Assembly (NCBI GenBank): GCA_037447605.1
Contig: CM074806.1
Span: 434,001-498,000 of the forward strand
Source of the DNA: Zygnema circumcarinatum SAG 698-1b
Taxonomy: Eukaryota > Plantae > Zygnematophyceae
DNA: 64,000 nucleotides
Reading direction: 5' to 3'
Positions 1 to 33,902 of this stretch are shown here, in pieces. Under the pieces are notes generated by a model. The model worked only from the letters and a program-made list of their open reading frames with translations, made no database searches and had not been told where the DNA came from. How positions within the stretch are numbered: the first letter of the stretch is position 1; every line of letters begins with the position of its first letter. The translations under genes and the position numbers were made by a program.

Positions 1-745
1 AAGCTCAACGGCCTTTTCCATGTCCTTGGGGACTCCATCTCCGTTCTGGTAGCACCAACCTAAATTGAACTGGGCCGCAGAATGGCCCTTCTCTGCAGCG
101 CGCCTATAAAGCTCAACGGCCTTTTCCATGTCCTTGGGGACTCCATCTCCGTTCTGGTAGCACCAACCTAAATTGAACTGGGCCGCAGAATGGCCCTTCT
201 CTGCAGCGCGCCTAAAAAGCTCAACGGCCTTTTCCATGTCCTTGGGGACTCCATCTCCGTACATGTAGCACCAACCTAAATTGTTCTGGGCCGCAGAATG
301 GCCCTTCTCTGCAGCGCGCCTAAACAGCTCAACGGCCTTTTCCATGTCCTTGGGGACTCCATCTCCGTTCTGGTAGCACAAACCTAAATTGTTCTGGGCC
401 GCAGAATGGCCCTTCTCTGCAGCGCGCCTAAACAGCTCAACGGCCTTTTCCATGTCCTTGGGGACTCCATCTCCGTTCTGGTAGCACAAACCTAAATTGC
501 TCTGGGCCGCAGAATGGCCCTTCTCTGCAGCGCGCCTATAAAGCTCAACGGCCTTTTCCATGTCCTTGGGGACTCCATCTCCGTTATAGTAGCACCAACC
601 TAAATTGAACTGGGCCGCAGAATGGCCCTTCTCTGCAGCGCGCCTAAAAAGCTCAACGGCCTTTTCCATGTCCTTGGGGACTCCATCTCCGTTATAGTAG
701 CACATACCTAAAGTGTACTGCGCATCACTGTCTCCCTGATCCGCC
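1..745 (-). repeat. 108-bp coding tandem repeat (about 7 Sel1-like repeats in window)
   Basis: Units start at 1, 109, 217, 325, 433, 541 and 649. The period is 108 nt (36 codons) and the minus-strand frame is open throughout. Confidence 0.97.
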
Positions 746-2723
746 CTCATCCTTAATTCACTCACCATCTTCCGCTCCCTGTAAGGCGAATCTTCTACTT
801 CTTTTTTTTCAAGTGCAGGCGTTTGTGCTGATCCTGCTGAATCCGGTTGCTTTCCCTTCTTTGCATCCTCCGCTGCTTTTTGCAACCGAGGCAGCACATC
901 GCTCTCAAGACTTGGGCGAAGAGACCTCTCCTCCGCCACGCACCGCAGTGCCACGTGGAGGGCTGCCTCTGTCGGCTCCCGCCCCCACGCCCCTGCCCGC
1001 GGGTCCAGCTTCTCCATGAAGACAGCTGCCGCCTTCTCCAAGTCGCGCTTGGACTGTTCTGCCCCGCCGCTCTCGAGGAGTTCATGGATGTTCTGAATCT
1101 TGGGGTCGCCCGTGAAGAGCTGCAACATGACGAGGCCGAGGGCGAACACGTCGGCAGTGCCTGTGAGCATTCCCGTTCGTGCCTCCGGTGCCATGTACCT
1201 GTAAGGAGGCAAAATGGGGGGGACTTTTGAAGAAATGAATAAATTCCATCGCTATAAAGCAGCAGAGGATGACGGGAAGGAGAACTGCTCAAGAGGCAAC
1301 AAAACAGATTGGATTATGACGTACGGGAGAGTGCCTTTCAAACGGTCTGTTTGGATTGTGGCATCATAAAACAATTCTGCCAGGCCCATGTCCGCCAGCT
1401 TTGAGGTGAGGTTCACGTCCAATAGCACGTTCGCCGGCTTCAAGTCACAGTGGATGATACTTTGCTTGTGCATGAACAGAAGAGCTTTCGCCATCTCGGC
1501 ACATATCCGGATGCGGTCCGCCCAACCAAGGGGGGGGTACTTGGCAACAGGACCTTTCAGGCGGTCCTTGAGGCTCCCTCCGCTCATGAGCTCGCTCACA
1601 AAGCAGCGCGCTTCGGGGCTCCATTTCATGAACTGCACAATGTGGGGATGGTGCAGCCCTTTTAAAGCTTCCACCTCCTTCTCAAATTCCTCCAGGGGAC
1701 TGCCCTCATGCAGCCTCTTTACCGCCACAGGGGTGCCGTACAGCATGCCTTTGTAGACCGATCCAAAGGCTCCATTTCCAAGCAGGTTTTTTTCGGAGAA
1801 GTTGTCGGTGATGTCCGCCATTAGGCTTCCGGGAAGGGTGTCAGAAAGTGCCATTGCTCTGCGGAATCGCTTCTCATCCAGTTTTGTCCCTTTGGCAGCG
1901 ATAAGTTCAATAGTTATTTGAATGCTTTGCTCCTCTTGTGGACGATTGTCAGATACAGCACGTTCCTTCTCCTCCTTCAACTCCTCCACGAACGTTTCGA
2001 CCTGCGTGAGGATATGCCATGCATGAGGATCGCTTAAGAATGTCGATCAAGGAGTGTGTGATACCTCGACATCACACGTAGCCATAGGCCAATCATGCAC
2101 GCAAACATGCTGCAACTCCTGCTGCCAAGAAGTCATGCGGAATTCAAGCCCTATGCGCTCGAAACCAAGACAAAGCAATCTCCGCAAAAGAGAGCGCCTC
2201 CCACCTCCTCCTGCGTGACCTTCCCCTCCTCCAGAAGGCGGCTCACAAGCACCTTCACCGACTCCGGCTTGTCGACCGTCGCCCCCCCCAACCGCGCGGC
2301 ATTTTGCGCCCTCTCCTCCTCCTCCGCCTCCTGCACTGCTCTCAACCCGTCATCCTTCAACTCCTGCTCCCGCTGATCTTTATTCAGCTTTCGCAAAATC
2401 AGGAAGTCCAGCTCCCAATGCGTTATGTAGACATGGATCTCCTTTATGTCATCGGAGATCTGCTGGTAGTAGAGCAGGCGGTAGAGCACGCTCCACGTGC
2501 AGCGCTTGGCTAGTTTTTCGGCGGAGTGCACGTGCTTCAGTAGCTGCTGCAGGACCTTCTTCTCCGGCAGGGGGGCCCTCTCCGCTATGCGCTTCTCCAG
2601 GAGGGAGGAAAGGTTCTCCACGCGCTGGCAGAGGAGGTCGCCCAGTTTTCGGTGTGACTTTACAGTGTCCCACACGGTCCGCAGGGCGATTACCGCATCG
2701 ACAACTGATTTCACCATGTCCAT
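1..2723 (-). CDS. MLKL-like N-terminal 4-helix-bundle + non-RD RLK/Pelle kinase + Sel1-repeat protein (3' end beyond window start)
   Basis: Exons 2205-2723, 1325-2001 and <1-1198 join in frame at GT-AG sites (TQEE|VETF; KGTLP|YMAPE). Exon 1 resembles the MLKL NTD (TVKSHRKLGDLLCQRVENLSSLLE...LYRLLYYQQISDDIKEI). Kinase motifs: LGNGAFGSVYKG, VAVK, HCDLKPAN, DMG, APE, DVFALG. The C-terminal 36-aa repeats (RRAAEKGHSAAQFNLGWCYQNGDGVPKDMEKAVEL) fit the Sel1 consensus. Confidence 0.9.
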
Positions 2724-3239: not shown

Positions 3240-3545
3240 CGGACCAGTGGATCGGCAACCATTGGACAACCATTGGATGGCAATGGTTGGACGTCTACTG
3301 GTTGGCAACCAGTCGACTGGTTGCCAACCAGTGGCATCCACTGGTTCCAAACCAGTCGAATGGTTGCCAACCAGTGGCATCCACTGGTTCCAAACCAGTC
3401 GAATGGTTGTCAACCAGTGGCATCCACTGGTTGGCAACCAGTCGAATGGTTGTTTCGGTCCGCAACCACTGGTTGGCAACCAGTCGACTGGTTTGGAACA
3501 AGTGGATGCCACTGGTTGGCAACCAGTCGAATGGTTGTTTCGATC
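3240..3545. repeat. Array of TGGTT-N3-AACCA palindromic boxes (same family as 48437-49762)
   Basis: Repeated TGGTTnnnAACCA boxes joined by GTCGA(C/A) and GTGGCATCCAC linkers. The leader GGATCGGCAACCATTGGACAACCATTGGATGGCAATGGTTGGACGTC recurs inverted at about 49360-49410. Confidence 0.9.
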
Positions 3546-4180
3546 CAGGGGGAGAGGGAGAGGGGGAGAGGGGAGAAGGGGGGGAGGGGGAACGGGGGGG
3601 GAGAGGGGGGTGAGGGGGAGGGGGAGGAAGAGGGGGAGAGAAGGACGAGAGGGACCGGGGGCGGAGAGGATGGGGAGAGGAAGGGTGAGGGGTGAAGGGA
3701 AAGAAAGGGGGGTTGGGAGGGGAAGAGGGAGGGGGTGAAGGGAGGAAAACGGTGGGGGAGCGGGGCGCGAGGAGAAGGGGAAAGGGAGAATGGGAGAGGG
3801 AGGGAAGGGAGGGGGGGCAGCAAGAAGGAAGGAGACAATGAGAGGGAGAAGAGTGACAGAGGAGGGGGAGGAAGAGTGGGGGGGGTGGAAGGAGGGGGAA
3901 AGAGGGAACGGGGAATGAAGGGGGAGGGGGGAGTCTAAAGGTTGGGCGAAGGGGAAGAATTTGCGGAAGCAGGTGAGTGGAGGGGGCGATGGGGGGAAAG
4001 AAGCAGCCAAAATCCGGACGGACTGCCAAACGGATCAGCTGTCGGATCCCATCACAGAAGCTCCCACAAGCCCCACTTTGAAATTCTAAACCCTAACCCT
4101 AAAAACCTCAATCCCCTCCAGTGCCCTGAATCCTGACCCACTCCCCCCTTCCTTCCTCCTCCTCCTCCTCCTCCCTCGCA

Positions 4181-4972: not shown

Positions 4973-7900
4973 ATGGCGGAGCTGGCGGACGGGGTGCCGG
5001 AGCCAAGCGGCAGCGGGCATGTGATGATGATGGAGGAAGAGGGAGGGGCAGAGCTGAGAGAGATGGAGGTCGCCATGGCTGGAGAGAGGCGCTCGGAGCT
5101 CCTGCAGACTATGGCGACGGCGGGTTCAGGCAGCCAATGGCGGTTGGACAGCTGGCGGGAGCAGATGAAGGAGAAGGTGGAGAAGCTGGAGGCGGCGCTG
5201 AAGCGATTGGAGGCCGAGAAGAGGTGAGGGGGAGGGTTCAGGAGGGTTTTGGAATGGATATGGACGTGGATGTGCAGTAAGGACTTTGAAACCACTTTGA
5301 GGTTTGAAGTGTTTTGAGGATTTTGAGTTTTTGTTTTTGTGAAGATTCTGAAAACGTTTTGGAAGATCTTTGAAATTTTTTTTGGAAGGATTTGGAAAGG
5401 TTTTTGAAGGTTTTGGAAAAAACTTGAACGTTTTGGAAAGGTGTTGGAAAGGTCTTTGAAGGTTTTGGAAAGGATTTGAAAGAATTTTGAAAAGGTCGTT
5501 AGGTTTTTGAAAGGGTTTGGAAGGGCTTGGAAGGTGAAGAGATGGTTCAGGAAGGTCAGTTGTGATCATTTTGGATCATATTCTTCTTAGTTGGTTCAGC
5601 CCAAAAAACACGCCTGCACTTCCACTAGAGCTTACAGTCCCAAAAAAAAAACTGGTTCTTGCTTGTTTTGCAAATTCATCCGTTAATTATATCTCTACTA
5701 CCCCTTTTTCGCCTCAAAATCTGCTCTCGCTCTCCTTCTCTCTCTCTTCCCCTCTATATCTCCGTCTCCCTCCCTCCGCCCTCTCTCTGTCTATCTTTTT
5801 CTCCCTCTTTCTCACTATCCCCGTCCCTCTCTCTCTCCTTCTCTCTTCTTTCTCTCTCCCTTACTCGATTTCACTTGAAGCATGTCATCAAGGCAGGCAT
5901 CTCTATTTTTTTTTCTATTTTTCTTGCTGAGGAAAATTATTGATTTCCATTGGCTTGCGAGGGTGCGTCAGTAGTCAAACTTCCGTACAAATCCTCTACT
6001 GGTAGCCTATGATAAACATGACACCTTGCTATTCTGCAATAACGCCGTCAGACTGAACATATCCATAGAACAAATTCATCAATGTGCAAACACATAGATA
6101 TGGAATTAAAAAAGTAAATAAATTGCTTTTGCGGTTCTCAAAACACGTCTGGATGCGCACAATCTGATGATTTTTTTAGTTCATTTCGTTTGCCTTTCGT
6201 TGTCCTCCTTTCCCTTCTTCTTTTCTTAGTTTGATTTTCTTTTTTTCCAATCATTCTATGATGTTCAGGCAGGAGATGGACAATATAATGCGACGAATGA
6301 GAACGTCAGATGCTCTGATGGGATACCTCGCCGCCAAGGCTCGCCTTATGAACGTTTCGGAAACCCCTCCCTCCCTCTCTCTCTCTCTGTCGGCATCTCA
6401 AAGGGGGTTGCAGTACAGCAGTGGTAGTGTGGTGGGAAATGAGAGTGAAAAGACTAGGGAGACAGCAGAGATTGCGAAGGCTGAATTGGCGGAGACTGCA
6501 GGTGGTAAAAAAGAACTTCCTCACCCTCTCTCTCTCTGTCGCTCCCTCACTCTTTCTTTCACTCTCTCTGCTTCTCTCTGTCCAGCTGCAAGATCTTCCA
6601 TCCCACTCATGTGATTTACAAAAAAATGCTGTTTTCAAGCGTTTCTGAGGGCTCTGTTCCCGCACGATTTTTTACTGAATCAGACCTTCATAGAAATCGG
6701 GTTGGATTTCAACTTCCCTATCTTGATAAAGCTCATTTGGACCCGGCTGAATGCAGGCTGCTCCTTGAACTTGAAACATTTTGAATTTGCAGAGTCGACA
6801 GGGCCTTCATCTGATGCTGCACATCTCAGCCGGCTTGCAAGCACAGGTAATTAAGCAGACAGGGCAATTCTCCTCTACTTCGCATATTCAGCAGAAAACA
6901 TCTGCCTCTAAGTGGGGCAATTTATAAGTATCCATATATTCCGATATACCGTTGGAGGTATTTGTATAGTCGTTCTTTATGTGAACCCTTGTTCTCGTTC
7001 GGTCAAAAAGATTCTGACTGACTGACTGAAATTTTAGCAATGTGATTTTGTGACGGCAGTGACGGAGGTGACGGAAGTGATGGGGTCCCTTCTCCGGCGA
7101 GCCCTTCAAGCAGAACAGACTGTGAGAGAGACTAAGGGGCAGTTGGAAGCCTGCCAGGTGGCAGCACGGGAGAGGGCGAAGGAGATGGGGGGCATGTGGG
7201 AGAAGGTGGAGGCTATGGAGCGATCAGCGAAAGTGACAGGTGTCCAACTCCCTCCTCTCCCTCACCCTCCTCCTTTCCCTCCCTCTCTACCTCTGTGTGC
7301 CTCTAGCCCAACAAGACTTTCTACGACCCAAAACTATGAAATTCTCTCAAAGATTAACCCTAATTGTGGGGTGGTGAGGTACAGAGGAGCAGCTGAAGGA
7401 CATGCAGCATCGGCTTGCGGAGTTGGCGGTGGAGACGAAGCAGCAGAGAGAGAGAGCGGCGGAAAATGAAGCGGAGATAGCGAGTGTGAGAGCGCAAGTA
7501 GGGCAGCTGAGAGGGGGAGTGGAGCAGTTGGCAGCTTCGCGGGAGACCATTGTGGGGTTGGAACAACGCCTGCGGGAGATGGAGACGACGACCAAAGGGT
7601 GAGGAGAGGGAGNNNNNNNNNNGGAGGGAGGGGAGGGAGGGGAGGGAGGGAGGGGAGGAGGGAGGGAGGGAAAGGGGAGAGGGGCCCAGAGAGTGTGAGG
7701 GAGGGGGGCCGAGAGGAGTGAGCAGGGATGGGAGAAGGCACGAGAGAGAGGAGGTGGTAAGGATGGCAGGAAGGGGGGAAGGGAGGGAGATGTGGAGAGG
7801 AGAGAGGTTAGGAGGAGAACAAAGAGCTAAAGCTAAAAGAACTGTGTTCCTGTTCCATGCCCCATGTTCCCTGTGTGCAGTTTGACTCTCCGTTTGGACG

Positions 7901-9136: not shown

Positions 9137-12100
9137 ATGCCGTCGCTGCGGCGCGCGCCTCTGGCGGACGCGCTGACGTGCGCGCTCTGCCGACGGCTCC
9201 TCCGTGACGCGACAACTGTCACGGAGTGCCTGCACACGTGTATGGCCCTCGGCTCAGGGCTCGGGGTTAGGATTTTGGGAGTTAGGGTTTCAAGTGCGGG
9301 GTTTATGTTTAGGTTTCAGAGGTCAGGGTTGAGAGCTTTCGATTCAGGGTTAAAGTTAGGGTTAGGGTTTAGGGTTCAGGGTTAGGGTTAGGGTTAGGGT
9401 AGGGTTCAGGTTAAGGTTAGGGTTAGGGTTAGACTTAGGATTAGAGTTAGCGTAGGGTTAGGGATAGGGTGAGGGTTAGGGTTAGGGTGAGGGTTAGGGT
9501 TCAGGATCAGGGTTCAGGGTGCAGGGTTGAGGGTTAGGATTCAGGGTTAGGGTTAGGGTGCAAGGTTGAGGCTTGGGGTTCAGGGTTAGAGTTCAGGGTG
9601 AGGGTTAGGATTGGGATTCAGGGTTAGGGTTAGGGTTAGGGTTAAGGTGAGGGTTCGGGTGCAAGGTGCAGGGTTCAGAGGTCAGGGTTTTGGGCTTTGG
9701 TTTAGGGTTTGACGGTCGAGGTTTCGGGCTTAGGCTTAGGGTCCCGAGTTAGGGTCAGGGTTAGGGTTCAGAGGTGGTCGGGTTTAGGGTTTTTGGTACA
9801 GAGTTTAGGGTGTCGGCTTAGGGTTGAGGATTCAAAAGCTTACAATTTAGGATTGATGGTTGTGGGTTTAGAACTGAGGGTGGACGGGCTCAGAATTAGG
9901 GTTCAGAGTTTGGGATTTGATGTTTGAATTTTACAAGTCCCGCTCCAATCGCCTCTCTTTCTTCCTGTCTCTCTCCCTCTACTTCCTCCCTCCCTCCCTC
10001 CCTCGCCCTCCTCCCTCTTCCCCCCGGCTTTCACCCGCTCTCTCTCAGTTCGTCTCTCCCCCTCTCTCGCTTACCTCTCTCGCCCTCTCCCCCTTTGTCA
10101 CAGCCTTCCCTTCCTCACCTTGCAAGCTCAGACTTTCATGAGGGTTTCAGATTTAAGCTCTCCCTTTCCACCTCCCACCTAATTCTTTCTATGTTTTTTC
10201 TATTTCCTCTGATTTTCAGTTTGCAGGAAATGTATTTTCAAGGAGCTTAAGGCGGCACAGCGCGGGAGATGCCCCTCCTGCTTAATCGATTTGGGGGTTA
10301 ATCCCACGGAAAAATTAAGGTAAGTTGAAATATTTACAGTATTAGCCCCCNNNNNNNNNNCCCCCCCCCCCCCCCCCCCCCCCTTCACTCTCCTCTCCTC
10401 CCCCTCCCACCCTTTTCTTTTTTTTTGTTTTGTCGTTTTTTTGGAGACTGGATCGATTGACTACCTTTTCGTTTTTTTTTTCTTTCTTTTTTTTTTTTTT
10501 TAACAGGAGCGATTATCAGCTTTCGGAGCTTCGAAATAAAATTTTTCCGTCGAAGAGCAAAGAGGCTCCTCGTGACGCATTCCTGGAGAGTATCGTGGAA
10601 GCTTCCGGGAACCTTCCGGGAGAGCCTGCAAAGAAGAAGGCGAAAAAATCGCATCCGGAGAAAGAAGGAGGAGTCACTGTTCGATCTCTCTCAGAAAAAA
10701 GAGAAGAAAATGAAATTTTCACTAAACAGTCTCTCATCTGTGAAGAACCGATGCTTGATGCGGACTATGATGATGAGGTTCAGGAAAGAGGAGAGGGGCT
10801 GGAGGAGGGAGAGAGAGAGCGCTCAGAGAAGGTGGAAGAAGTGAAGAAAGAAGAAATTAAGGAAGAAATTAAAGAAGATGAAATAGCTAACGATTTAGAA
10901 AAGGCAACCAGGGAAAGTGATGATGGGGTTTGTGAAGAAGATGGGAACGGTCTACCCATTGTACTTGCTCTAGAGGCACATATTTCTGGAACTGAACATG
11001 GAGGGGGGGAAGGAGGAGCAGAGGTAGAGGTAATGGAAGAGGAAGTGGGTGGGGAAGGGGGAGGCGGAAGGGCAGGAGTGGGAGAAGGAGCGGGAGGAAC
11101 AGTGGGAGTCGTGGAGGGAGACGAAGTGGGAGATGCAATGGGAGAGAGAGTTGGAGAGGGAGCAGGAAAAGACAACGAAACATCCCCTCGGAAGGATGAA
11201 CTTCAGAAGGTGGAGAGTAATTCTCCTTCCGGAAACGAGGTTTTAACTCCTCCTGAGATTTCTTCTCAAGTTCCAAATCAACCAGATTTTGCTCAAAACG
11301 CAGAAAATTCGGCTATCTCCAAAGCGCAAGTCGATCAAGCAGGGAGTTCTATGCCGTCGGCTGCAACGGAACGGACAACTGAAGCTTCGGATTCATCTTC
11401 TGTTCCACAAGGCGTGACTGTTTCCATCGACACCGTTAAGGACAACGGAACGGCGGAAAATCCGCAAGGATTTCCCCCTGTTCAGTGGAGCGGAAAAACG
11501 GAACCCCATTCTCCTATTGAAGACTCCAAAATTTCGATTCCGAACCTCATGTCTCAAGTAACGGATGCTGCCACTCCTTCACTTTCCGCTCCCACTACCG
11601 CCCTCAAACCGACTCCCACACTCTCTCCCACCCCCACTCACAAACCAACTCCTCCCAACCTCACTCCAACACCCACTCACACTCTCACTCCCACTGCCAC
11701 TCCCACTCCCATTCCCACTCCCACTCCCACTACCACTCCCACTGCCACTCCCACTACCACTCCCACTGCCACTGCCACTCCCACTGCCACTGCCACTCCA
11801 ACTCCCGCTCCCACTGCCACTCTCACTGCCACTCCCACGCTCATTCCCATTCGCACTCCCACTCCCATTTCCACTCTCAGAGCGACTCCTCTTACTCCAG
11901 CAGCTTCAGGAACTCCTCTCATACCCCCCCCAAACAACTCCACAAATATGAACAGACCAAGTAATGTCATTCCCAGTGCGAACGGTCTTTTTTCTCCAAA
12001 TGTTTCGTGGGTGAAACGGCCGCTCCATGTGCCGGGGGGGCTCGATCTCAGCCAATGGAAACCGCCCAAAACCCCTAATTTTCAGTTAAACGGAACGAGT

Positions 12101-23219: not shown

Positions 23220-26200
23220 TTAGTCCCAGTCGAGGGTTCCGCCGTGCCCGGGCTGGTCATCGAGCTCGTAGAGAGGCCCGTTCACTGAAAAAAAAAAAAA
23301 GGTTCGGGGGGGGGGGGGGGGGGGGGNNNNNNNNNNGGGGGTACAATTTATTTGAATCAAAATTAATTGAAAAAAGCAAAAAAATTGAGAAATTAAGTTC
23401 CCATTCAGCAGCTCTCTCCCTCTCCTCCCTTTCTCTCTTTTTTTTCTTTTTTGTTTTTTTACCTCGGTATCCTCCTCGGACAGGGTCGTTGGCCAATAGG
23501 AGCGGCGTGTCCAGGTCGACGAATCTGCCCCGACAAGAAAAAGAAAAAAACACGAGAAAAAATATCAACGCCGAAATCCTCCAAAAACACAAAATTTCAG
23601 GAAACCCAAATACTCTAAACTTCAAAACCCTCAATGGCCCAAAAACCCAAAAAGCCCCAAAACCCTAAAACACTAAACCCCCAAAACCCTAAACCTTACA
23701 ACCCTGAAACCCTAAAACCCTTCAACCCCCAACCCCGCCACCCTAAAACCCTAAACCCCAAAACCCCAAAACCCCAAAACCCAAACCCCAACCCTCCTAC
23801 CCTCCCTAGCCCCCTACCCCTTTACCCCCCCTACCCCTTACCCCCTACCCCTACCCCCTACCCCCCTACCCCCCTACCCCCCTACCCCCCTACCACCCTA
23901 CCCCCCTACCCCCCTACCTCCCTACCCCCCTACCCCCCTACCCCCCTACCTCCCTACCCCCCTACCCCCCTACCCCCCTACCCCCCTACCCCCCTACCCC
24001 CCTACCCCCTACCCCCCTCCCCCCAACCCCCTAACCCCTACCCCCTACCCCTGACCTCTACCCCTACCCCTACCCCTACCCCCCTACCCCCCTACCCCCT
24101 ACCCCTACCCCCCCCCCTACCCCCTACCCCCCTACCCTACCCCCCTACCCTACCCCCCTACCCCTACCCCCCTACCCCTACCCCTACCCCCTACCCCTAC
24201 CCCTACCCCCTGCCCCTACTACCCCCTGCCCCTACCCCTACCCCTGCCCCCTACCCCCTACCCCTACCCCTACCCCCTGCCCCCTACCCCCCTACCCCCT
24301 GCCCCTACCCCTAGCCCCTAGCTCCCACCTGAACCCCCCAGGCCCTAGCCCCTAGCCCCTAGCCCCTAGCCCCTAGCCCCACCTAGCCCCACCTGACCCC
24401 CCCAGGCCCTAGCCCCTAGCCCCTAGCCCCTAGCCCCACCTGAACCCCCCCAGGCCCGCCGCGAGGTGCGCGGAGAAGCCCATTCCGATGCGCGTCTCGA
24501 CCATTCCGCCAATCATGAGCGCCAGCCCGTGGCGGCGCGCCACGTGGACGATTTCGAGGGCGCCGAGGACGCCCACTTTGGCGAGTTTGATGTTGATGGC
24601 GCCCGCCAGCTGGCGGCTCGCGATTCGCTCCGCGTCGGCGAGGCTGCGGCAGCTTTCGTCGGCCGCCACCTGGACGCCGTACAGCCGCCCGGCGACCTCG
24701 CTGACGTGGCGGATGCCCAGCCAATCACGGCGCGGCGTGGGCTGCTCGAAGAGGATCGGATCCAAACCAAGGTCTAAAAATGATATTTTTTTCCAAAAAA
24801 AAAAAATTTAGAGGGAAGTAATCAACTGTTGAATGGATCCAGAAGTGAAATTTTTTATCATAAATTAAAAAAAAAAAAAAAAATTACCGTGTAGCCGCTC
24901 GAGCACTTGCAGGGCCTGTTCCGAAGTGTATCCGCAGTTCGCGTCGAGGAGGAGATCGCAGGTCGGGTGGCCACGTCGGATGGCGGATAGACGCGCCACG
25001 TCAGCATCCACAGTGGTGCCGCCAATCTTCGTCTTGATGGAGAGGAATCCTCTCTGCCAATAGTGAGCTGCCAGCTCAGCAGCGGTGGAGGGAGAGCAGA
25101 TGGGGATCTGATGGGGGCGAGAGGAAGGGAAAAGGAAGGCATGAGGGGGTTTTTTGTTTTCAGTTTTCAGTCGGAGTTCGAATCTGAGGAACGGGTTTGG
25201 GTCAGAAGTGGAGAGGGAGACGGGGGGGGGAGGGGGAGGGAGGGGAGATGGAGAGGGAGGAGGAGAGGGAGAGGGAGAGGGAGAGGGAAAGGGAGGAGAG
25301 ATGGAGAGGGCGAGAAAGGAGAGAGGGAGAGGGAGGGGAGATGGAGAGGGGGGAGGAGAAGGAGAGGAAGAGGGAGGAGAGAGGGAGAGGGCGAGGAAGG
25401 AGAGAGGGAGAGGGAGGGAAGATGGAGATGGAGAGGATGGAGACGAGGGGTTAGGAGGGGAAATGGAGTAGGAGGAGGAGAGGGAGAGGAAGGGGAGAGG
25501 AAGAGTAAGTATAAGGGGGAGGGGGGGGCAGAGGGAGAGGAAAAGCAGAGATGAGAGAGGAGAAGCAAGGGAAACCGGAAGCAGAGGGAAAAGGGAAGAG
25601 GACATGGAGAGGAGAGGGAGGTAGAGAACACAGAGAAAATTACGGATTCAAACATTTGATAGCCTTCACTATTGGGAAGGCAAAATCTGAAGGGGTTGGG
25701 GTGGGAGAGAAGGTGATGTTGGGGCCGCCGCAACATACTGTGATGTCGGTCGTGACGCGGTCGCTACATCCTCCGAAGAAGGCCCAAAGAGGAATCTCCT
25801 GACTGCGCGCAACTGCGTCAACAATTGACATTTCTACCCCCGCTCGGATCTGGAAAAAAACCAAATGAATAAAGCAGTTTAAATAAGGAAATAAAGCAAT
25901 CCGGCAATCGATTGAATGATTAAAAGGTAATTGCTTGCCGAATCAATAACAACAATAGAGCTGATTAAAGAGTTCGATCATAAAACATGAAAGTGGGTAA
26001 ATTTAATCGATAAACCGATCCTTTAAACCAGGCCCAAAAAACATAAACCCAAAACCCCCAAAATCCGAAAACCTCACACAATAAAAAACACGAACCAGAA
26101 TTTCAAAAACCTGAAGCACCCCAATAACCTTAAAAAAAAAAAAACAGCACAAAAAAACCCATAAAAAAAGAAAAAAATTACCGCTGCGTATTGGTGTCCG

Positions 26201-33095: not shown

Positions 33096-33239
33096 AGCGT
33101 CCCCTTACATCTCTTCTAAAAAGCTCTCCCTTTTGAACTTGAACCCACTTTTAAACTTTTTAACCAACCCACTTCCCTTTTCCTTCTTCTTCTTCTTCTT
33201 CTCCTTCTTCTCCTTCTTCTTCTTTTTGTGCAGCACGCA

Positions 33240-33902
33240 ATGCCCCTCCGAGCAGTGAACCTGACCCATGTCCGCTACGAACATGGCGACCTTCTCGGGA
33301 AGCTCCTCGCGTGGTTCTCTCTCCTCCCCGTCTTCATCGCCCTTGGCGGCTTCACCTCCCTCGCCCTCTTCCGCCGCGAGCTTCAAACCATCTTCTTCGC
33401 CCTCGGTCTCGGCATGTCTGAAGTGCTCAACCAAACCCTAAAGCGAATCATCCGCCAATCACGGCCTGCCACGTGTCATGCTCTCGAGACATGTGACAGC
33501 CATGGCATGCCCTCCAGCCACTCTCAATACATGTGCTTTTTCGCCATATATTGCTCTCTTTTAGTCCTCAAAAGACTGACTTTTTCCGACCGTTTCAGTT
33601 ACTACTTCAGTCTCCTCCTCCCTTGGCCCCTTGCCTTCCTCACAATGTGGTCCAGAGTCTATCTCGGCTACCACACCTTCCCCCAAGTCATGGCCGGAGC
33701 TTGCGTGGGGCTAAGTATGGGGTATTTTTGGTGGTGGCTTGTGGACTCTAAATTTGTTCCTAAATTTCCTGACTGGTCGGAAAGCCGCGTTTGCCGCTAC
33801 CTCTGCATAAAAGACAATGGTCACATCCCTAATGTTTTGGAATTTGAGTACAAGAATTCGTTGGCTGTCCGAAAGGTGCTTCAAGACATGAAGGCGGATT
33901 AG
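33240..33902 (+). CDS. LPPG: Lipid phosphate phosphatase gamma / dolichyl-diphosphatase (PAP2 family)
   Basis: Intronless CDS. LTHVRYEHGDLLGKLLAWFSLLP, KRIIRQSRP, GMPSSHSQYM and SRVYLGYHT cover PAP2 motifs C1-C3. Confidence 0.93.
   Translation: MPLRAVNLTHVRYEHGDLLGKLLAWFSLLPVFIALGGFTSLALFRRELQTIFFALGLGMSEVLNQTLKRIIRQSRPATCHALETCDSHGMPSSHSQYMCFFAIYCSLLVLKRLTFSDRFSYYFSLLLPWPLAFLTMWSRVYLGYHTFPQVMAGACVGLSMGYFWWWLVDSKFVPKFPDWSESRVCRYLCIKDNGHIPNVLEFEYKNSLAVRKVLQDMKAD

What the first reader, a model, noticed from the sequence alone, without database searches (positions are those of the whole stretch)
1..745. Sel1 repeats homogenised at DNA level yet hypervariable at five codons
Seen: six full units are almost identical at the nucleotide level. 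Differences fall at fixed codons: Y/F (RRAA start), F/S/N (AAQxNL), W/L/M (LGxCY), Q/Y/M and N/Y (CYxxG). I saw only one synonymous variant (CTT/CTG Leu). Known: this pattern characterises high-internal-conservation WD40/TPR/ANK repeats of fungal NLRs such as HET-E, where repeat shuffling creates new recognition specificities. Inference: a rapidly diversifying ligand-binding surface maintained by unequal crossover or gene conversion.
Basis: partly seen in the sequence, partly recalled or inferred. Interest (0 to 1): 0.78.

Follow-up and report, generated by a model that had tools for sequence, protein, structure and literature searches.

The report
Near-identical Sel1 repeats, variable groove residues
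A kinase gene of a plant-related alga ends in about eight almost identical 36-residue Sel1 repeats that differ almost only at four residues lining the predicted binding groove, a pattern known from fast-evolving fungal immune receptors but not yet shown to be evolving fast here.

Summary
Window 1-729 (minus strand) encodes six full and one cut 108-nt Sel1 units: TRF 6.7 copies, 96% match, no indels; Pfam Sel1 E 1.7e-97.

- **Where the units differ.** Units U2-U7 are 94-100% identical in DNA. They differ at 9 nucleotide columns in codons 5, 9, 12, 13, 27 (the one synonymous change) and 28.
- **Clustering.** It is non-random (P about 0.002-0.009). Four of the five variable residues are TPR/Sel1 concave-face specificity positions (P 4e-4).
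- **Position 28.** F/Y here is a conservative core position, not a hypervariable one.
- **Structure.** The AlphaFold model (pLDDT 97) matches solved Sel1 solenoids.
- **Comparators.** Five unrelated internally conserved Sel1 arrays (four prokaryotic, one from Pelomyxa) vary at the same positions.
- **Gene.** It reads as an MLKL/MCAfunc-like helical exon, then a non-RD kinase, then Sel1 repeats. It has no NOD domain, so it is not an NLR.

Concerted evolution of the array is well supported.

The scan had already noted this same stretch in overlapping windows. It also noted near-identical 108-bp Sel1 units in another paralogue on other DNA of this genome.

The parts
1..81 (-). Sel1 unit U7, cut by the window edge (27 of 36 codons). 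Identical to U6 over its 81 nt.
82..189 (-). Sel1 unit U6. Residues at positions 5/9/12/13/28: F W Q N Y.
190..297 (-). Sel1 unit U5 (N W M Y F). Its private differences are 3 nt, all in codons 12-13.
298..405 (-). Sel1 unit U4 (N L Q N F). It differs from U3 by 1 nt (AAC/AGC in codon 5).
406..513 (-). Sel1 unit U3 (S L Q N F). It shares the synonymous CTG at codon 27 with U4.
514..621 (-). Sel1 unit U2 (F W Y N Y). It differs from U6 only by 2 nt, both in codon 12. Its TAT there equals that of U1.
622..729 (-). Edge unit U1. Its first 27 nt are diverged (9/27 nt, including synonymous changes); the remaining 81 nt are homogenised (3/81).
   Evidence: Fisher P=1.5e-4
739..786 (-). N-terminal capping helix, resembling a helix B, that precedes U1.
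   Evidence: AlphaFold model, helix at residues 5-20
787..1198 (-). Start of the last exon: kinase C-lobe (the YMAPE motif onward) and a linker. The AG acceptor is at 1199-1200.
   Evidence: The splice site was read from the sequence.
1325..2001 (-). Exon 2: kinase N-lobe and catalytic loop. It has HCD (non-RD) and DMG in place of DFG. The GT donor is at 1323-1324.
2205..2723 (-). Exon 1 (173 aa, ATG at 2723): all-helical domain resembling MCAfunc / MLKL_N / RPW8.
   Evidence: feature score 0.94; all-helical, low confidence. Pfam gives no hit.

Best explanation
The stretch is the C-terminal Sel1 (SLR) solenoid of a three-exon, minus-strand gene in a streptophyte genome. The gene's order is an MLKL/MCAfunc-like helical exon, a non-RD protein kinase, then about eight Sel1 units.

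The units are kept almost identical in DNA by recent single-unit duplication and by unequal crossover or gene conversion within the array (concerted evolution). The outer part of the first unit escapes this.

Against that uniform background, amino-acid differences are confined to helix-A positions 5, 9, 12 and 13. These line the concave groove and set ligand specificity in TPR and Sel1 proteins. The backbone-anchoring Asn at position 6 and the whole scaffold stay fixed.

Each unit thus acts as a cassette with its own contact residues. Duplicating, deleting or exchanging units re-tiles the groove.

What is shown: the array, its coding frame, the clustering of differences, the fold and the register.
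What is inferred: the homogenising mechanism; selection, most likely diversifying, acting on the four positions; and that ligand binding controls the kinase and the helical head.
For: - **Array and frame:**. Pfam Sel1 E 1.7e-97 with 7 stretches.
- **Homogenisation:**
  - DNA identity among U2-U7 is 94-100% with one synonymous step in about 22 synonymous sites.
  - Adjacent pairs are the most alike: U3/U4 differ by 1 nt, U6/U7 by 0.
  - U1 differs at 9/27 nt before codon 10 but 3/81 after it, including synonymous changes, P=1.5e-4. Synonymous sites are therefore free to drift where homogenisation stops.
- **Clustering:**
  - Nine of 11 minimal steps fall in four codons, P=0.002.
  - Four of five variable residues fall in the a-priori TPR set {2,5,9,12,13}, P=4e-4.
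  - Against a null in which synonymous sites and all non-consensus positions evolve neutrally, P=5.5e-6 counting steps, or 1.9e-3 if multi-nucleotide changes count once.
  - Other non-consensus positions (2, 15, 18, 21-23, 26, 36) do not vary at all.
- **Structure:**
  - AlphaFold pLDDT 97.3 with a 13-7-13-3 helix-loop pattern.
  - Foldseek TM 0.91 to LceB, and matches to EsiB/c5321, LpnE and HcpC.
  - Helix 1 forms the concave face (PMC10868440, PMC3851747).
  - With the register checked by alignment, the groove contacts of c5321 are repeat positions 2, 5, 6 (Asn anchor), 9 and 13.
- **Generality:** five independent internally conserved Sel1 arrays put 50-71% of their nonsynonymous steps in positions 2, 5, 9, 12, 13 and 36.
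Against: - Only seven units from one assembly were available.
- Whole-unit N:S of 10:1 is not significantly above neutral (P=0.46).
- The test of the four variable codons against synonymous sites (P=1e-5) chose its codons after seeing the data.
- No alleles, orthologues or paralogues could be retrieved. The best database identity was 59% and the metagenome scans were empty.
- Neither repeat-number polymorphism nor turnover of the variable residues has been seen.
- Positions 2 and 36, which are hypervariable in the comparators, are invariant here.
- Read support and expression could not be checked.
- In LceB the concave face showed no conserved patch, and the authors point to the convex face. 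Groove binding is therefore not universal in Sel1 proteins.
Confidence: 0.6

Rival explanations
1. The binding surface is fixed and differentiated. Conversion and unit duplication homogenise the array. The four positions differ because purifying selection preserves unit-specific contact residues for one conserved ligand. Nothing is diversifying.
For: The same data fit this reading: variable residues on the groove face and a uniform scaffold. Whole-unit N:S is not significant. Sel1 proteins commonly act as constant adaptors, for example SEL1L/Hrd3 (matches).
Against: - U6 and U7, and nearly U3 and U4, are duplicates carrying the same contact residues. That looks like recent, unrefined unit gain rather than a tuned surface.
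- Codons 5 and 12 need 3 and 4 steps each while synonymous sites show one step. Old preserved differences would have to survive many rounds of conversion with breakpoints a few bases away.
- The same positions vary in unrelated internally conserved arrays.
Confidence: 0.25
2. Assembly artefact. The array, or its unit order and number, is a mis-assembly of a repeat: collapsed, expanded, or a chimera of paralogues.
For: Tandem 108-nt units at 94-100% identity are hard to assemble. The window holds nine 10-N runs elsewhere. An earlier scan note reports a heavily broken Sel1 array in another paralogue of this assembly (unchecked).
Against: - The frame is open across all units with no indels.
- Units carry distinct variant combinations that allow unique placement.
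- About 860 nt is short enough for single long reads to span.
- There are no N runs in 1-2723.
Confidence: 0.07
3. Neutral, very recent amplification. The few differences are chance or clustered multi-nucleotide mutations at unconstrained positions, without selection.
For: The sample is small. Several differences are adjacent or share a codon (TT/AA, CAGAAC/ATGTAC) and could be single mutational events. Nine of 11 steps are transversions.
Against: Even when multi-nucleotide changes are counted once, 5 of 6 events fall in the four groove codons (P=0.0019). The overlap with the independent a-priori sets gives P=4e-4 and P=1.2e-3. Ten other non-consensus positions and about 22 synonymous sites carry one change in all.
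Confidence: 0.05

Closest known systems
Highly internally conserved WD40/ANK/TPR repeats of fungal NLRs: HET-E/D/R and the NWD family (Paoletti 2007, Chevanne 2010, as cited in Dyrka 2014; Dyrka 2014 itself is PMC4986451)
   Same: Repeat units are more than 85% identical over more than 100 aa. A few variable positions per unit map to the concave binding face. The signs of unit duplication and exchange are also present.
   Different: The repeat type here is Sel1. The host protein has no NOD/NACHT/NB-ARC domain but a helical head plus an apparently active kinase. The lineage is a streptophyte, where Dyrka et al. found only 0.4% of repeats to be highly conserved. Repeat-number polymorphism and positive selection, which were shown in Podospora, are untested here.
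Hypervariable ligand-binding positions of TPR repeats (Magliery & Regan 2005, PMC1261162), and the peptide groove of the Sel1 protein c5321/EsiB (PMC3851747)
   Same: With L7-G8-Y11 in register, the window's variable positions 5, 9, 12 and 13 are four of the TPR concave-face positions 2, 5, 9, 12, 13. The invariant Asn at position 6 matches the backbone-anchoring Asn N310/N345 of c5321.
   Different: Those studies compare repeats across many proteins, or within one old protein. Here the contrast lies within one array whose DNA is otherwise identical.
Other internally conserved Sel1 arrays found here: P0008 (TIR-Sel1), P0221 (kinase-Sel1), P0164 (Sel1-AAA/STAND-like) and P0126 (Nitratireductor), all prokaryotic; and P0142 (Sel1-RRM, Pelomyxa schiedti)
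   Same: Units of 36 aa. Nonsynonymous steps concentrate at positions 2, 5, 9, 12, 13 and 36.
   Different: They are only 50-59% identical to the window's units and are not close relatives. Their DNA identity is lower (86-91% against 95%) and they carry many more synonymous steps (7-18 against 1). The window array is therefore the most recently homogenised of the set.
NB-ARC genes fused to Sel1-like repeats in Klebsormidium (Andolfo 2019, PMC7145615), and exon-shuffled TPR/LRR candidate receptors of brown algae (Zambounis 2012, PMC3341825)
   Same: Algal candidate receptors that use Sel1 or TPR repeats as the variable sensor part.
   Different: Those proteins have NB-ARC or ROCO cores. In Ectocarpus each repeat is its own exon. 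Here the whole array lies in one exon behind a kinase.
Plant MLKL, MCAfunc and RPW8-type four-helix-bundle proteins
   Same: Exon 1 resembles these families by language-model features (score 0.94, 201 of 256 features shared). It precedes a kinase domain, as in MLKL.
   Different: Pfam gives no hit and the single-sequence model is poor (pLDDT 60). The kinase keeps its catalytic residues. I know of no described MLKL that carries Sel1 repeats, and a paper search for MLKL plus Sel1 found none.

Membership tests
Sel1 repeat (SLR, PF08238) | Match to the Pfam Sel1 profile above the gathering score, in tandem | tested here: met
   E 1.7e-97, 316.8 bits against a cutoff of 30.7, 7 stretches
Sel1 repeat (SLR, PF08238) | Right-handed alpha/alpha solenoid with 13-residue helices, a 7-residue intra-repeat loop and a 3-residue inter-repeat loop | tested here: met
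   Model pLDDT 97.3 with a 13-7-13-3 pattern. TM 0.91 to LceB 8sxq and matches to 4bwr, 6deh and 1ouv. Same geometry as c5321.
Highly internally conserved (HiC) repeat domains in the sense of Dyrka 2014 | More than 85% identity between repeats over at least 100 aa | tested here: met
   U2-U7 are 89-100% identical in protein over about 207 aa. Criterion taken from PMC4986451.
Highly internally conserved (HiC) repeat domains in the sense of Dyrka 2014 | Variable positions map to the ligand-binding (concave) face | tested here: met
   By homology and register, not by coordinates:
Highly internally conserved (HiC) repeat domains in the sense of Dyrka 2014 | Codon-specific positive diversifying selection | tested here: inconclusive
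   Clustering is significant (P 0.002 to 5.5e-6), but whole-unit N:S is not (P=0.46). Seven units are too few for site models.
Highly internally conserved (HiC) repeat domains in the sense of Dyrka 2014 | Repeat-number polymorphism between strains, and exchange between paralogues | not testable with these tools
The species is absent from the protein and contig collections.
NLR / STAND receptors | Central NOD (NACHT or NB-ARC) NTPase domain | tested here: not met
   Pfam on all three exons finds only Pkinase and Sel1/TPR-type families
MLKL-like (four-helix bundle plus kinase fold) | N-terminal MLKL_N/HeLo-type four-helix bundle | tested here: inconclusive
   No Pfam hit. Language-model look-alikes are MCAfunc, MLKL_N and RPW8 at 0.94. 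The model is all-helical but has pLDDT 60, so it was not fold-searched.

The most novel reading that the evidence does not exclude
A streptophyte alga uses a family of MLKL-like helical-head kinases as receptors that lack a NOD domain. Their recognition surface is a concertedly evolving Sel1 cassette array: duplicating, losing and exchanging units re-tiles four groove residues per unit and quickly creates new binding specificities. This would be an independent, plant-lineage counterpart of the highly internally conserved repeat NLRs of fungi. Sel1 would join WD40, ANK and TPR as a repeat type used in this way, in bacteria and amoebae as well.
Probability: 0.3. Interest if true: 0.8.

Novelty: new variant of a known kind. 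Interest (0 to 1): 0.55.

Why it matters
Nearly identical repeats with a few hypervariable contact residues mark rapidly re-programmable recognition domains in fungal and bacterial NLR-like receptors. Dyrka et al. found them very rare in the green lineage (0.4% of repeats).

The same signature here sits in a Sel1 array behind a kinase and an MLKL/RPW8-like head, in a close algal relative of land plants. That would point to a recognition system that does not use NLRs and LRRs. It also yields a concrete, testable prediction: four residues per unit set the specificity.

The side result is a small generalisation that I did not find in the papers searched. Unrelated bacterial and amoebozoan Sel1 arrays show the same positional pattern.

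Tried and rejected
- **Reads and expression:** Assembly support, expression and repeat-number variation are untested.
- **Close relatives:** two word-indexed protein searches (last exon; four units) and one exhaustive representative search gave only generic Sel1 proteins, at most 59% identical. The species itself is not in the collections: a housekeeping ORF finds at best 77% identity.
- **Metagenome scans:** an exact 33-mer and a degenerate pattern for the unit core both gave 0 matches.
- **Paralogues in the window:** none. The paralogues noted elsewhere in this genome could not be fetched, and a look-up of scan notes by sequence was blank.
- **Helical exon:** the single-sequence AlphaFold model was too poor (pLDDT 60) to fold-search, so I did not.
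- **Spliced protein:** it was never joined or searched as a whole. The exons were handled one by one, by reference.
- **Solvent exposure:** Mapping rests on register and on published structures.
- **Considered and rejected:**
  - NLR membership, because there is no NOD domain.
  - A higher-order repeat, because TRF finds only period 108 and U7 resembles U6 rather than U3.
  - A pseudogene, because the frame is open and the splice sites are canonical.

Full report
**What is there**

Tandem Repeats Finder reports one array at window 1-720: period 108, 6.7 copies, 96% matches, no indels, score 1279. It is by far the cleanest tandem repeat in the 64-kb window.

The minus strand is an open frame through the whole stretch. 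It encodes 36-residue units that Pfam calls Sel1 (E 1.7e-97, seven stretches).

In protein order the units are U1 622-729, U2 514-621, U3 406-513, U4 298-405, U5 190-297, U6 82-189 and U7 1-81. The window edge cuts U7. An overlapping first-stage note gives the array as 864 letters, which would mean one more unit beyond the edge. I could not read that DNA.

**The gene**

Reading the sequence gives a three-exon model on the minus strand with canonical GT-AG introns.
- Exon 1 is 2723-2205 (173 aa).
- Exon 2 is 2001-1325. It holds the kinase N-lobe and catalytic loop, with HCD (so non-RD) and DMG in place of DFG.
- Exon 3 runs from 1198 to beyond position 1. The splice restores GTLPYMAPE. It then continues through the C-lobe, a linker, a capping helix and the Sel1 array.

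Pfam finds Pkinase in exons 2 and 3 and nothing in exon 1. By protein-language-model features, exon 1 resembles MCAfunc, MLKL_N and RPW8 clusters of streptophytes (score 0.94, 201 of 256 features). Its single-sequence model is all-helical but of low confidence, so I did not fold-search it.

There is no NOD domain.

A housekeeping ORF in the window (33240-33899) is 55-60% identical to land-plant lipid phosphate phosphatase gamma/dolichyldiphosphatase-type (PAP2) proteins. Its best hit is 77%, to an unnamed transcript product. The genome is therefore a streptophyte whose own proteins are not in the collections.

**Checking the pattern**

Among U2-U7, DNA identity is 94-100% and protein identity 89-100%. 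Nine of 108 columns vary, in these codons:
- Codon 5: TTC/AGC/AAC
- Codon 9: TGG/TTG
- Codon 12: TAT/CAG/ATG
- Codon 13: AAC/TAC
- Codon 27: CTT/CTG, synonymous
- Codon 28: TTT/TAT

The minimum number of steps is 11. Nine of them lie in codons 5, 9, 12 and 13.

Tests of the distribution:
- Same-codon clustering of the variable columns has P=0.004.
- Nine of 11 steps in any four codons has P=0.002.
- The whole-unit nonsynonymous to synonymous count, 10:1 over about 86:22 sites, is not significantly above neutral (P=0.46). A global dN/dS above 1 cannot be claimed.
- The contrast lies in where the changes fall. Take as neutral targets the synonymous sites plus all positions that are non-consensus across Sel1 proteins (2, 5, 9, 12, 13, 15, 18, 21-23, 26, 36; consensus). 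The four codons hold 21% of those targets but 9 of 10 steps (P=5.5e-6). If multi-nucleotide changes are counted as single events, they hold 5 of 6 events (P=0.0019).

**Signs of homogenisation rather than mere constraint**

- Adjacent units are the most alike. U3 and U4 differ by one base. U6 and U7 differ by none over 81 nt.
- U2 equals U6 except for two bases in codon 12, and its codon there is that of its neighbour U1.
- U1 differs from the consensus at 9 of its first 27 bases, including synonymous Ser and Ala changes, but at only 3 of the next 81 (P=1.5e-4).

So synonymous sites do drift where homogenisation stops. An edge unit that escapes homogenisation in this way is expected in arrays that evolve by unequal exchange.

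**Where the variable residues sit**

The AlphaFold model, built on an alignment of 61 sequences, has mean pLDDT 97.3. Each unit reads helix (positions 1-13), loop (14-20), helix (21-33), loop (34-36).

Foldseek matches solved Sel1 solenoids: LceB 8sxq at TM 0.91 and rmsd 1.6 Å, plus c5321/EsiB 4bwr, LpnE 6deh and HcpC 1ouv.

In LceB and c5321 the first helix of each repeat forms the concave inner surface and the second forms the convex one (PMC10868440, PMC3851747).

The sequence alignment to c5321 is ungapped within the repeat and in register. Using its published helix table, the residues that hold a peptide tail in its groove are these repeat positions (the mapping to repeat positions is mine):
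- T306 and A341: position 2
- A309 and Y272: position 5
- N310 and N345: position 6
- A313: position 9
- K280 and R317: position 13

For TPRs, positions 2, 5, 9, 12, 13, 33 and 34 are the most variable and lie on the concave face. HOP binds its peptides with positions 2, 5, 6, 9, 12 and 13 (PMC1261162).

Four of the window's five variable residues fall in the set {2,5,9,12,13} (P=4e-4). The anchoring Asn at position 6 is invariant in U2-U7.

Position 28 corresponds to c5321 position 29 ('F or Y'), which is part of the inter-repeat core. It is a conservative exchange, not a hypervariable site.

I could not compute solvent exposure directly, because model coordinates are not exposed to scripts.

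**Comparison with other arrays**

From the 270 database proteins returned I extracted ungapped 36-residue units. Twelve proteins have internally conserved unit groups. Positions with three or more residue types, counted over those 12 arrays:

| Position | Arrays |
|---|---|
| 2 | 10 |
| 12 | 9 |
| 5 | 7 |
| 9 | 7 |
| 36 | 7 |
| 13 | 6 |

For five of them I fetched the DNA:
- a kinase-Sel1 protein in a prokaryote-type gene neighbourhood
- a Nitratireductor protein
- a TIR-Sel1 protein
- a Sel1-AAA/STAND-like protein
- a Sel1-RRM protein of Pelomyxa schiedti

In these, 50-71% of nonsynonymous steps fall in those six positions. Unit DNA identity is 86-91%, with 7-18 synonymous steps.

The window array shows the same positional pattern in its most extreme form: 95% identity, 9 of 10 nonsynonymous steps in the set, and one synonymous step. 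The overlap of the window's variable positions with this independent set has P=0.0012.

None of these proteins is a close relative; identity is at most 59%.

**Interpretation**

The best reading is a concertedly evolving Sel1 solenoid. It is about one superhelical turn long, since seven to eight units make a turn in c5321. Its groove is tiled by unit-specific residues at four positions.

Whether those residues are turning over (diversifying selection, as in fungal NLR repeats; PMC4986451) or are old differences protected from homogenisation cannot be settled from one array of seven units.
- I give 0.6 to the diversifying-surface reading. In its favour are the recent duplicate units, the multi-step codons against an almost silent synonymous background, and the recurrence of the pattern elsewhere.
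- I give 0.25 to the fixed-surface rival.
- I give 0.07 to an assembly artefact.
- I give 0.05 to a neutral accident.

An immune or cell-death role is suggested only by analogy: the non-RD kinase, the MLKL/RPW8-like head and the repeat pattern. It is untested.

**Relation to what is known**

- Highly internally conserved repeats with hypervariable concave positions are established for the WD40, ANK and TPR domains of fungal NLRs. They are reported as very rare in Viridiplantae, at 0.4%.
- Sel1 repeats fused to NB-ARC have been noted in Klebsormidium (PMC7145615).
- Repeat shuffling in brown-algal candidate receptors is described in PMC3341825.
- Positive selection on Helicobacter Sel1-like proteins is on record (Ogura 2007, as cited in PMC3561388).
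- My paper searches found no description of this pattern for Sel1 repeats, nor of MLKL-like proteins carrying Sel1 arrays.

I therefore class the finding as a new variant of a known kind.

**Limits**

- The rest of the array lies outside the window.
- The scan had already noted this same stretch in overlapping windows. It also noted a similar freshly amplified 108-bp Sel1 array in another paralogue on other DNA of this genome. I treated these notes as leads only.

Noticed in passing
window 1325-2001 (-): The kinase has HCD instead of HRD in the catalytic loop, so it is a non-RD kinase. It has DMG instead of DFG. The Gly-rich loop, the VAVK lysine and the APE motif are kept.
   Followed up: partly
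window 3297-3546 and 48532-49741: Tandem arrays of a palindromic 42-43-nt unit (ACTGGTTGGCAACCAGT...). One lies about 570 nt upstream of the gene's start codon. It looks like a foldback or MITE-like satellite.
   Followed up: no
window 9309-9791, 23786-24437, 41759-42225, 45457-45660: Four interstitial telomere-like arrays (variants of TTAGGG/TTTAGGG, CCCCTA, TAGGG) within 64 kb.
   Followed up: no
window 7613-7622, 10351-10360, 23327-23336, 43957-43966, 46845-46854, 53713-53722, 56004-56013, 61724-61733, 63158-63167: Nine runs of exactly 10 N, either gaps or masked stretches. None lies in the gene studied.
   Followed up: no
window 33228-33902 (+): An intact single-ORF PAP2-family gene (lipid phosphate phosphatase gamma/dolichyldiphosphatase-type). 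It is 55-60% identical to land-plant proteins, and its best hit is 77%, to an unnamed transcript product. I used it only to place the genome among streptophytes.
   Followed up: partly
L001 3001-5736; L003 501-4973; L004 2001-3719; L005 2001-5897; L002 114-5326: Unrelated Sel1 arrays (kinase-Sel1, Nitratireductor, TIR-Sel1, Sel1-AAA/STAND-like, Pelomyxa Sel1-RRM) are internally conserved. They concentrate amino-acid change at repeat positions 2, 5, 9, 12, 13 and 36. This general pattern was not described in the papers I searched.
   Followed up: partly
window 82-621 (-): Nine of the 11 minimal substitution steps among U2-U7 are transversions, five of them A/T exchanges. This is unusual against a 1:1 expectation (P=0.03) but not against equal rates for all base changes (P=0.23).
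   Followed up: partly
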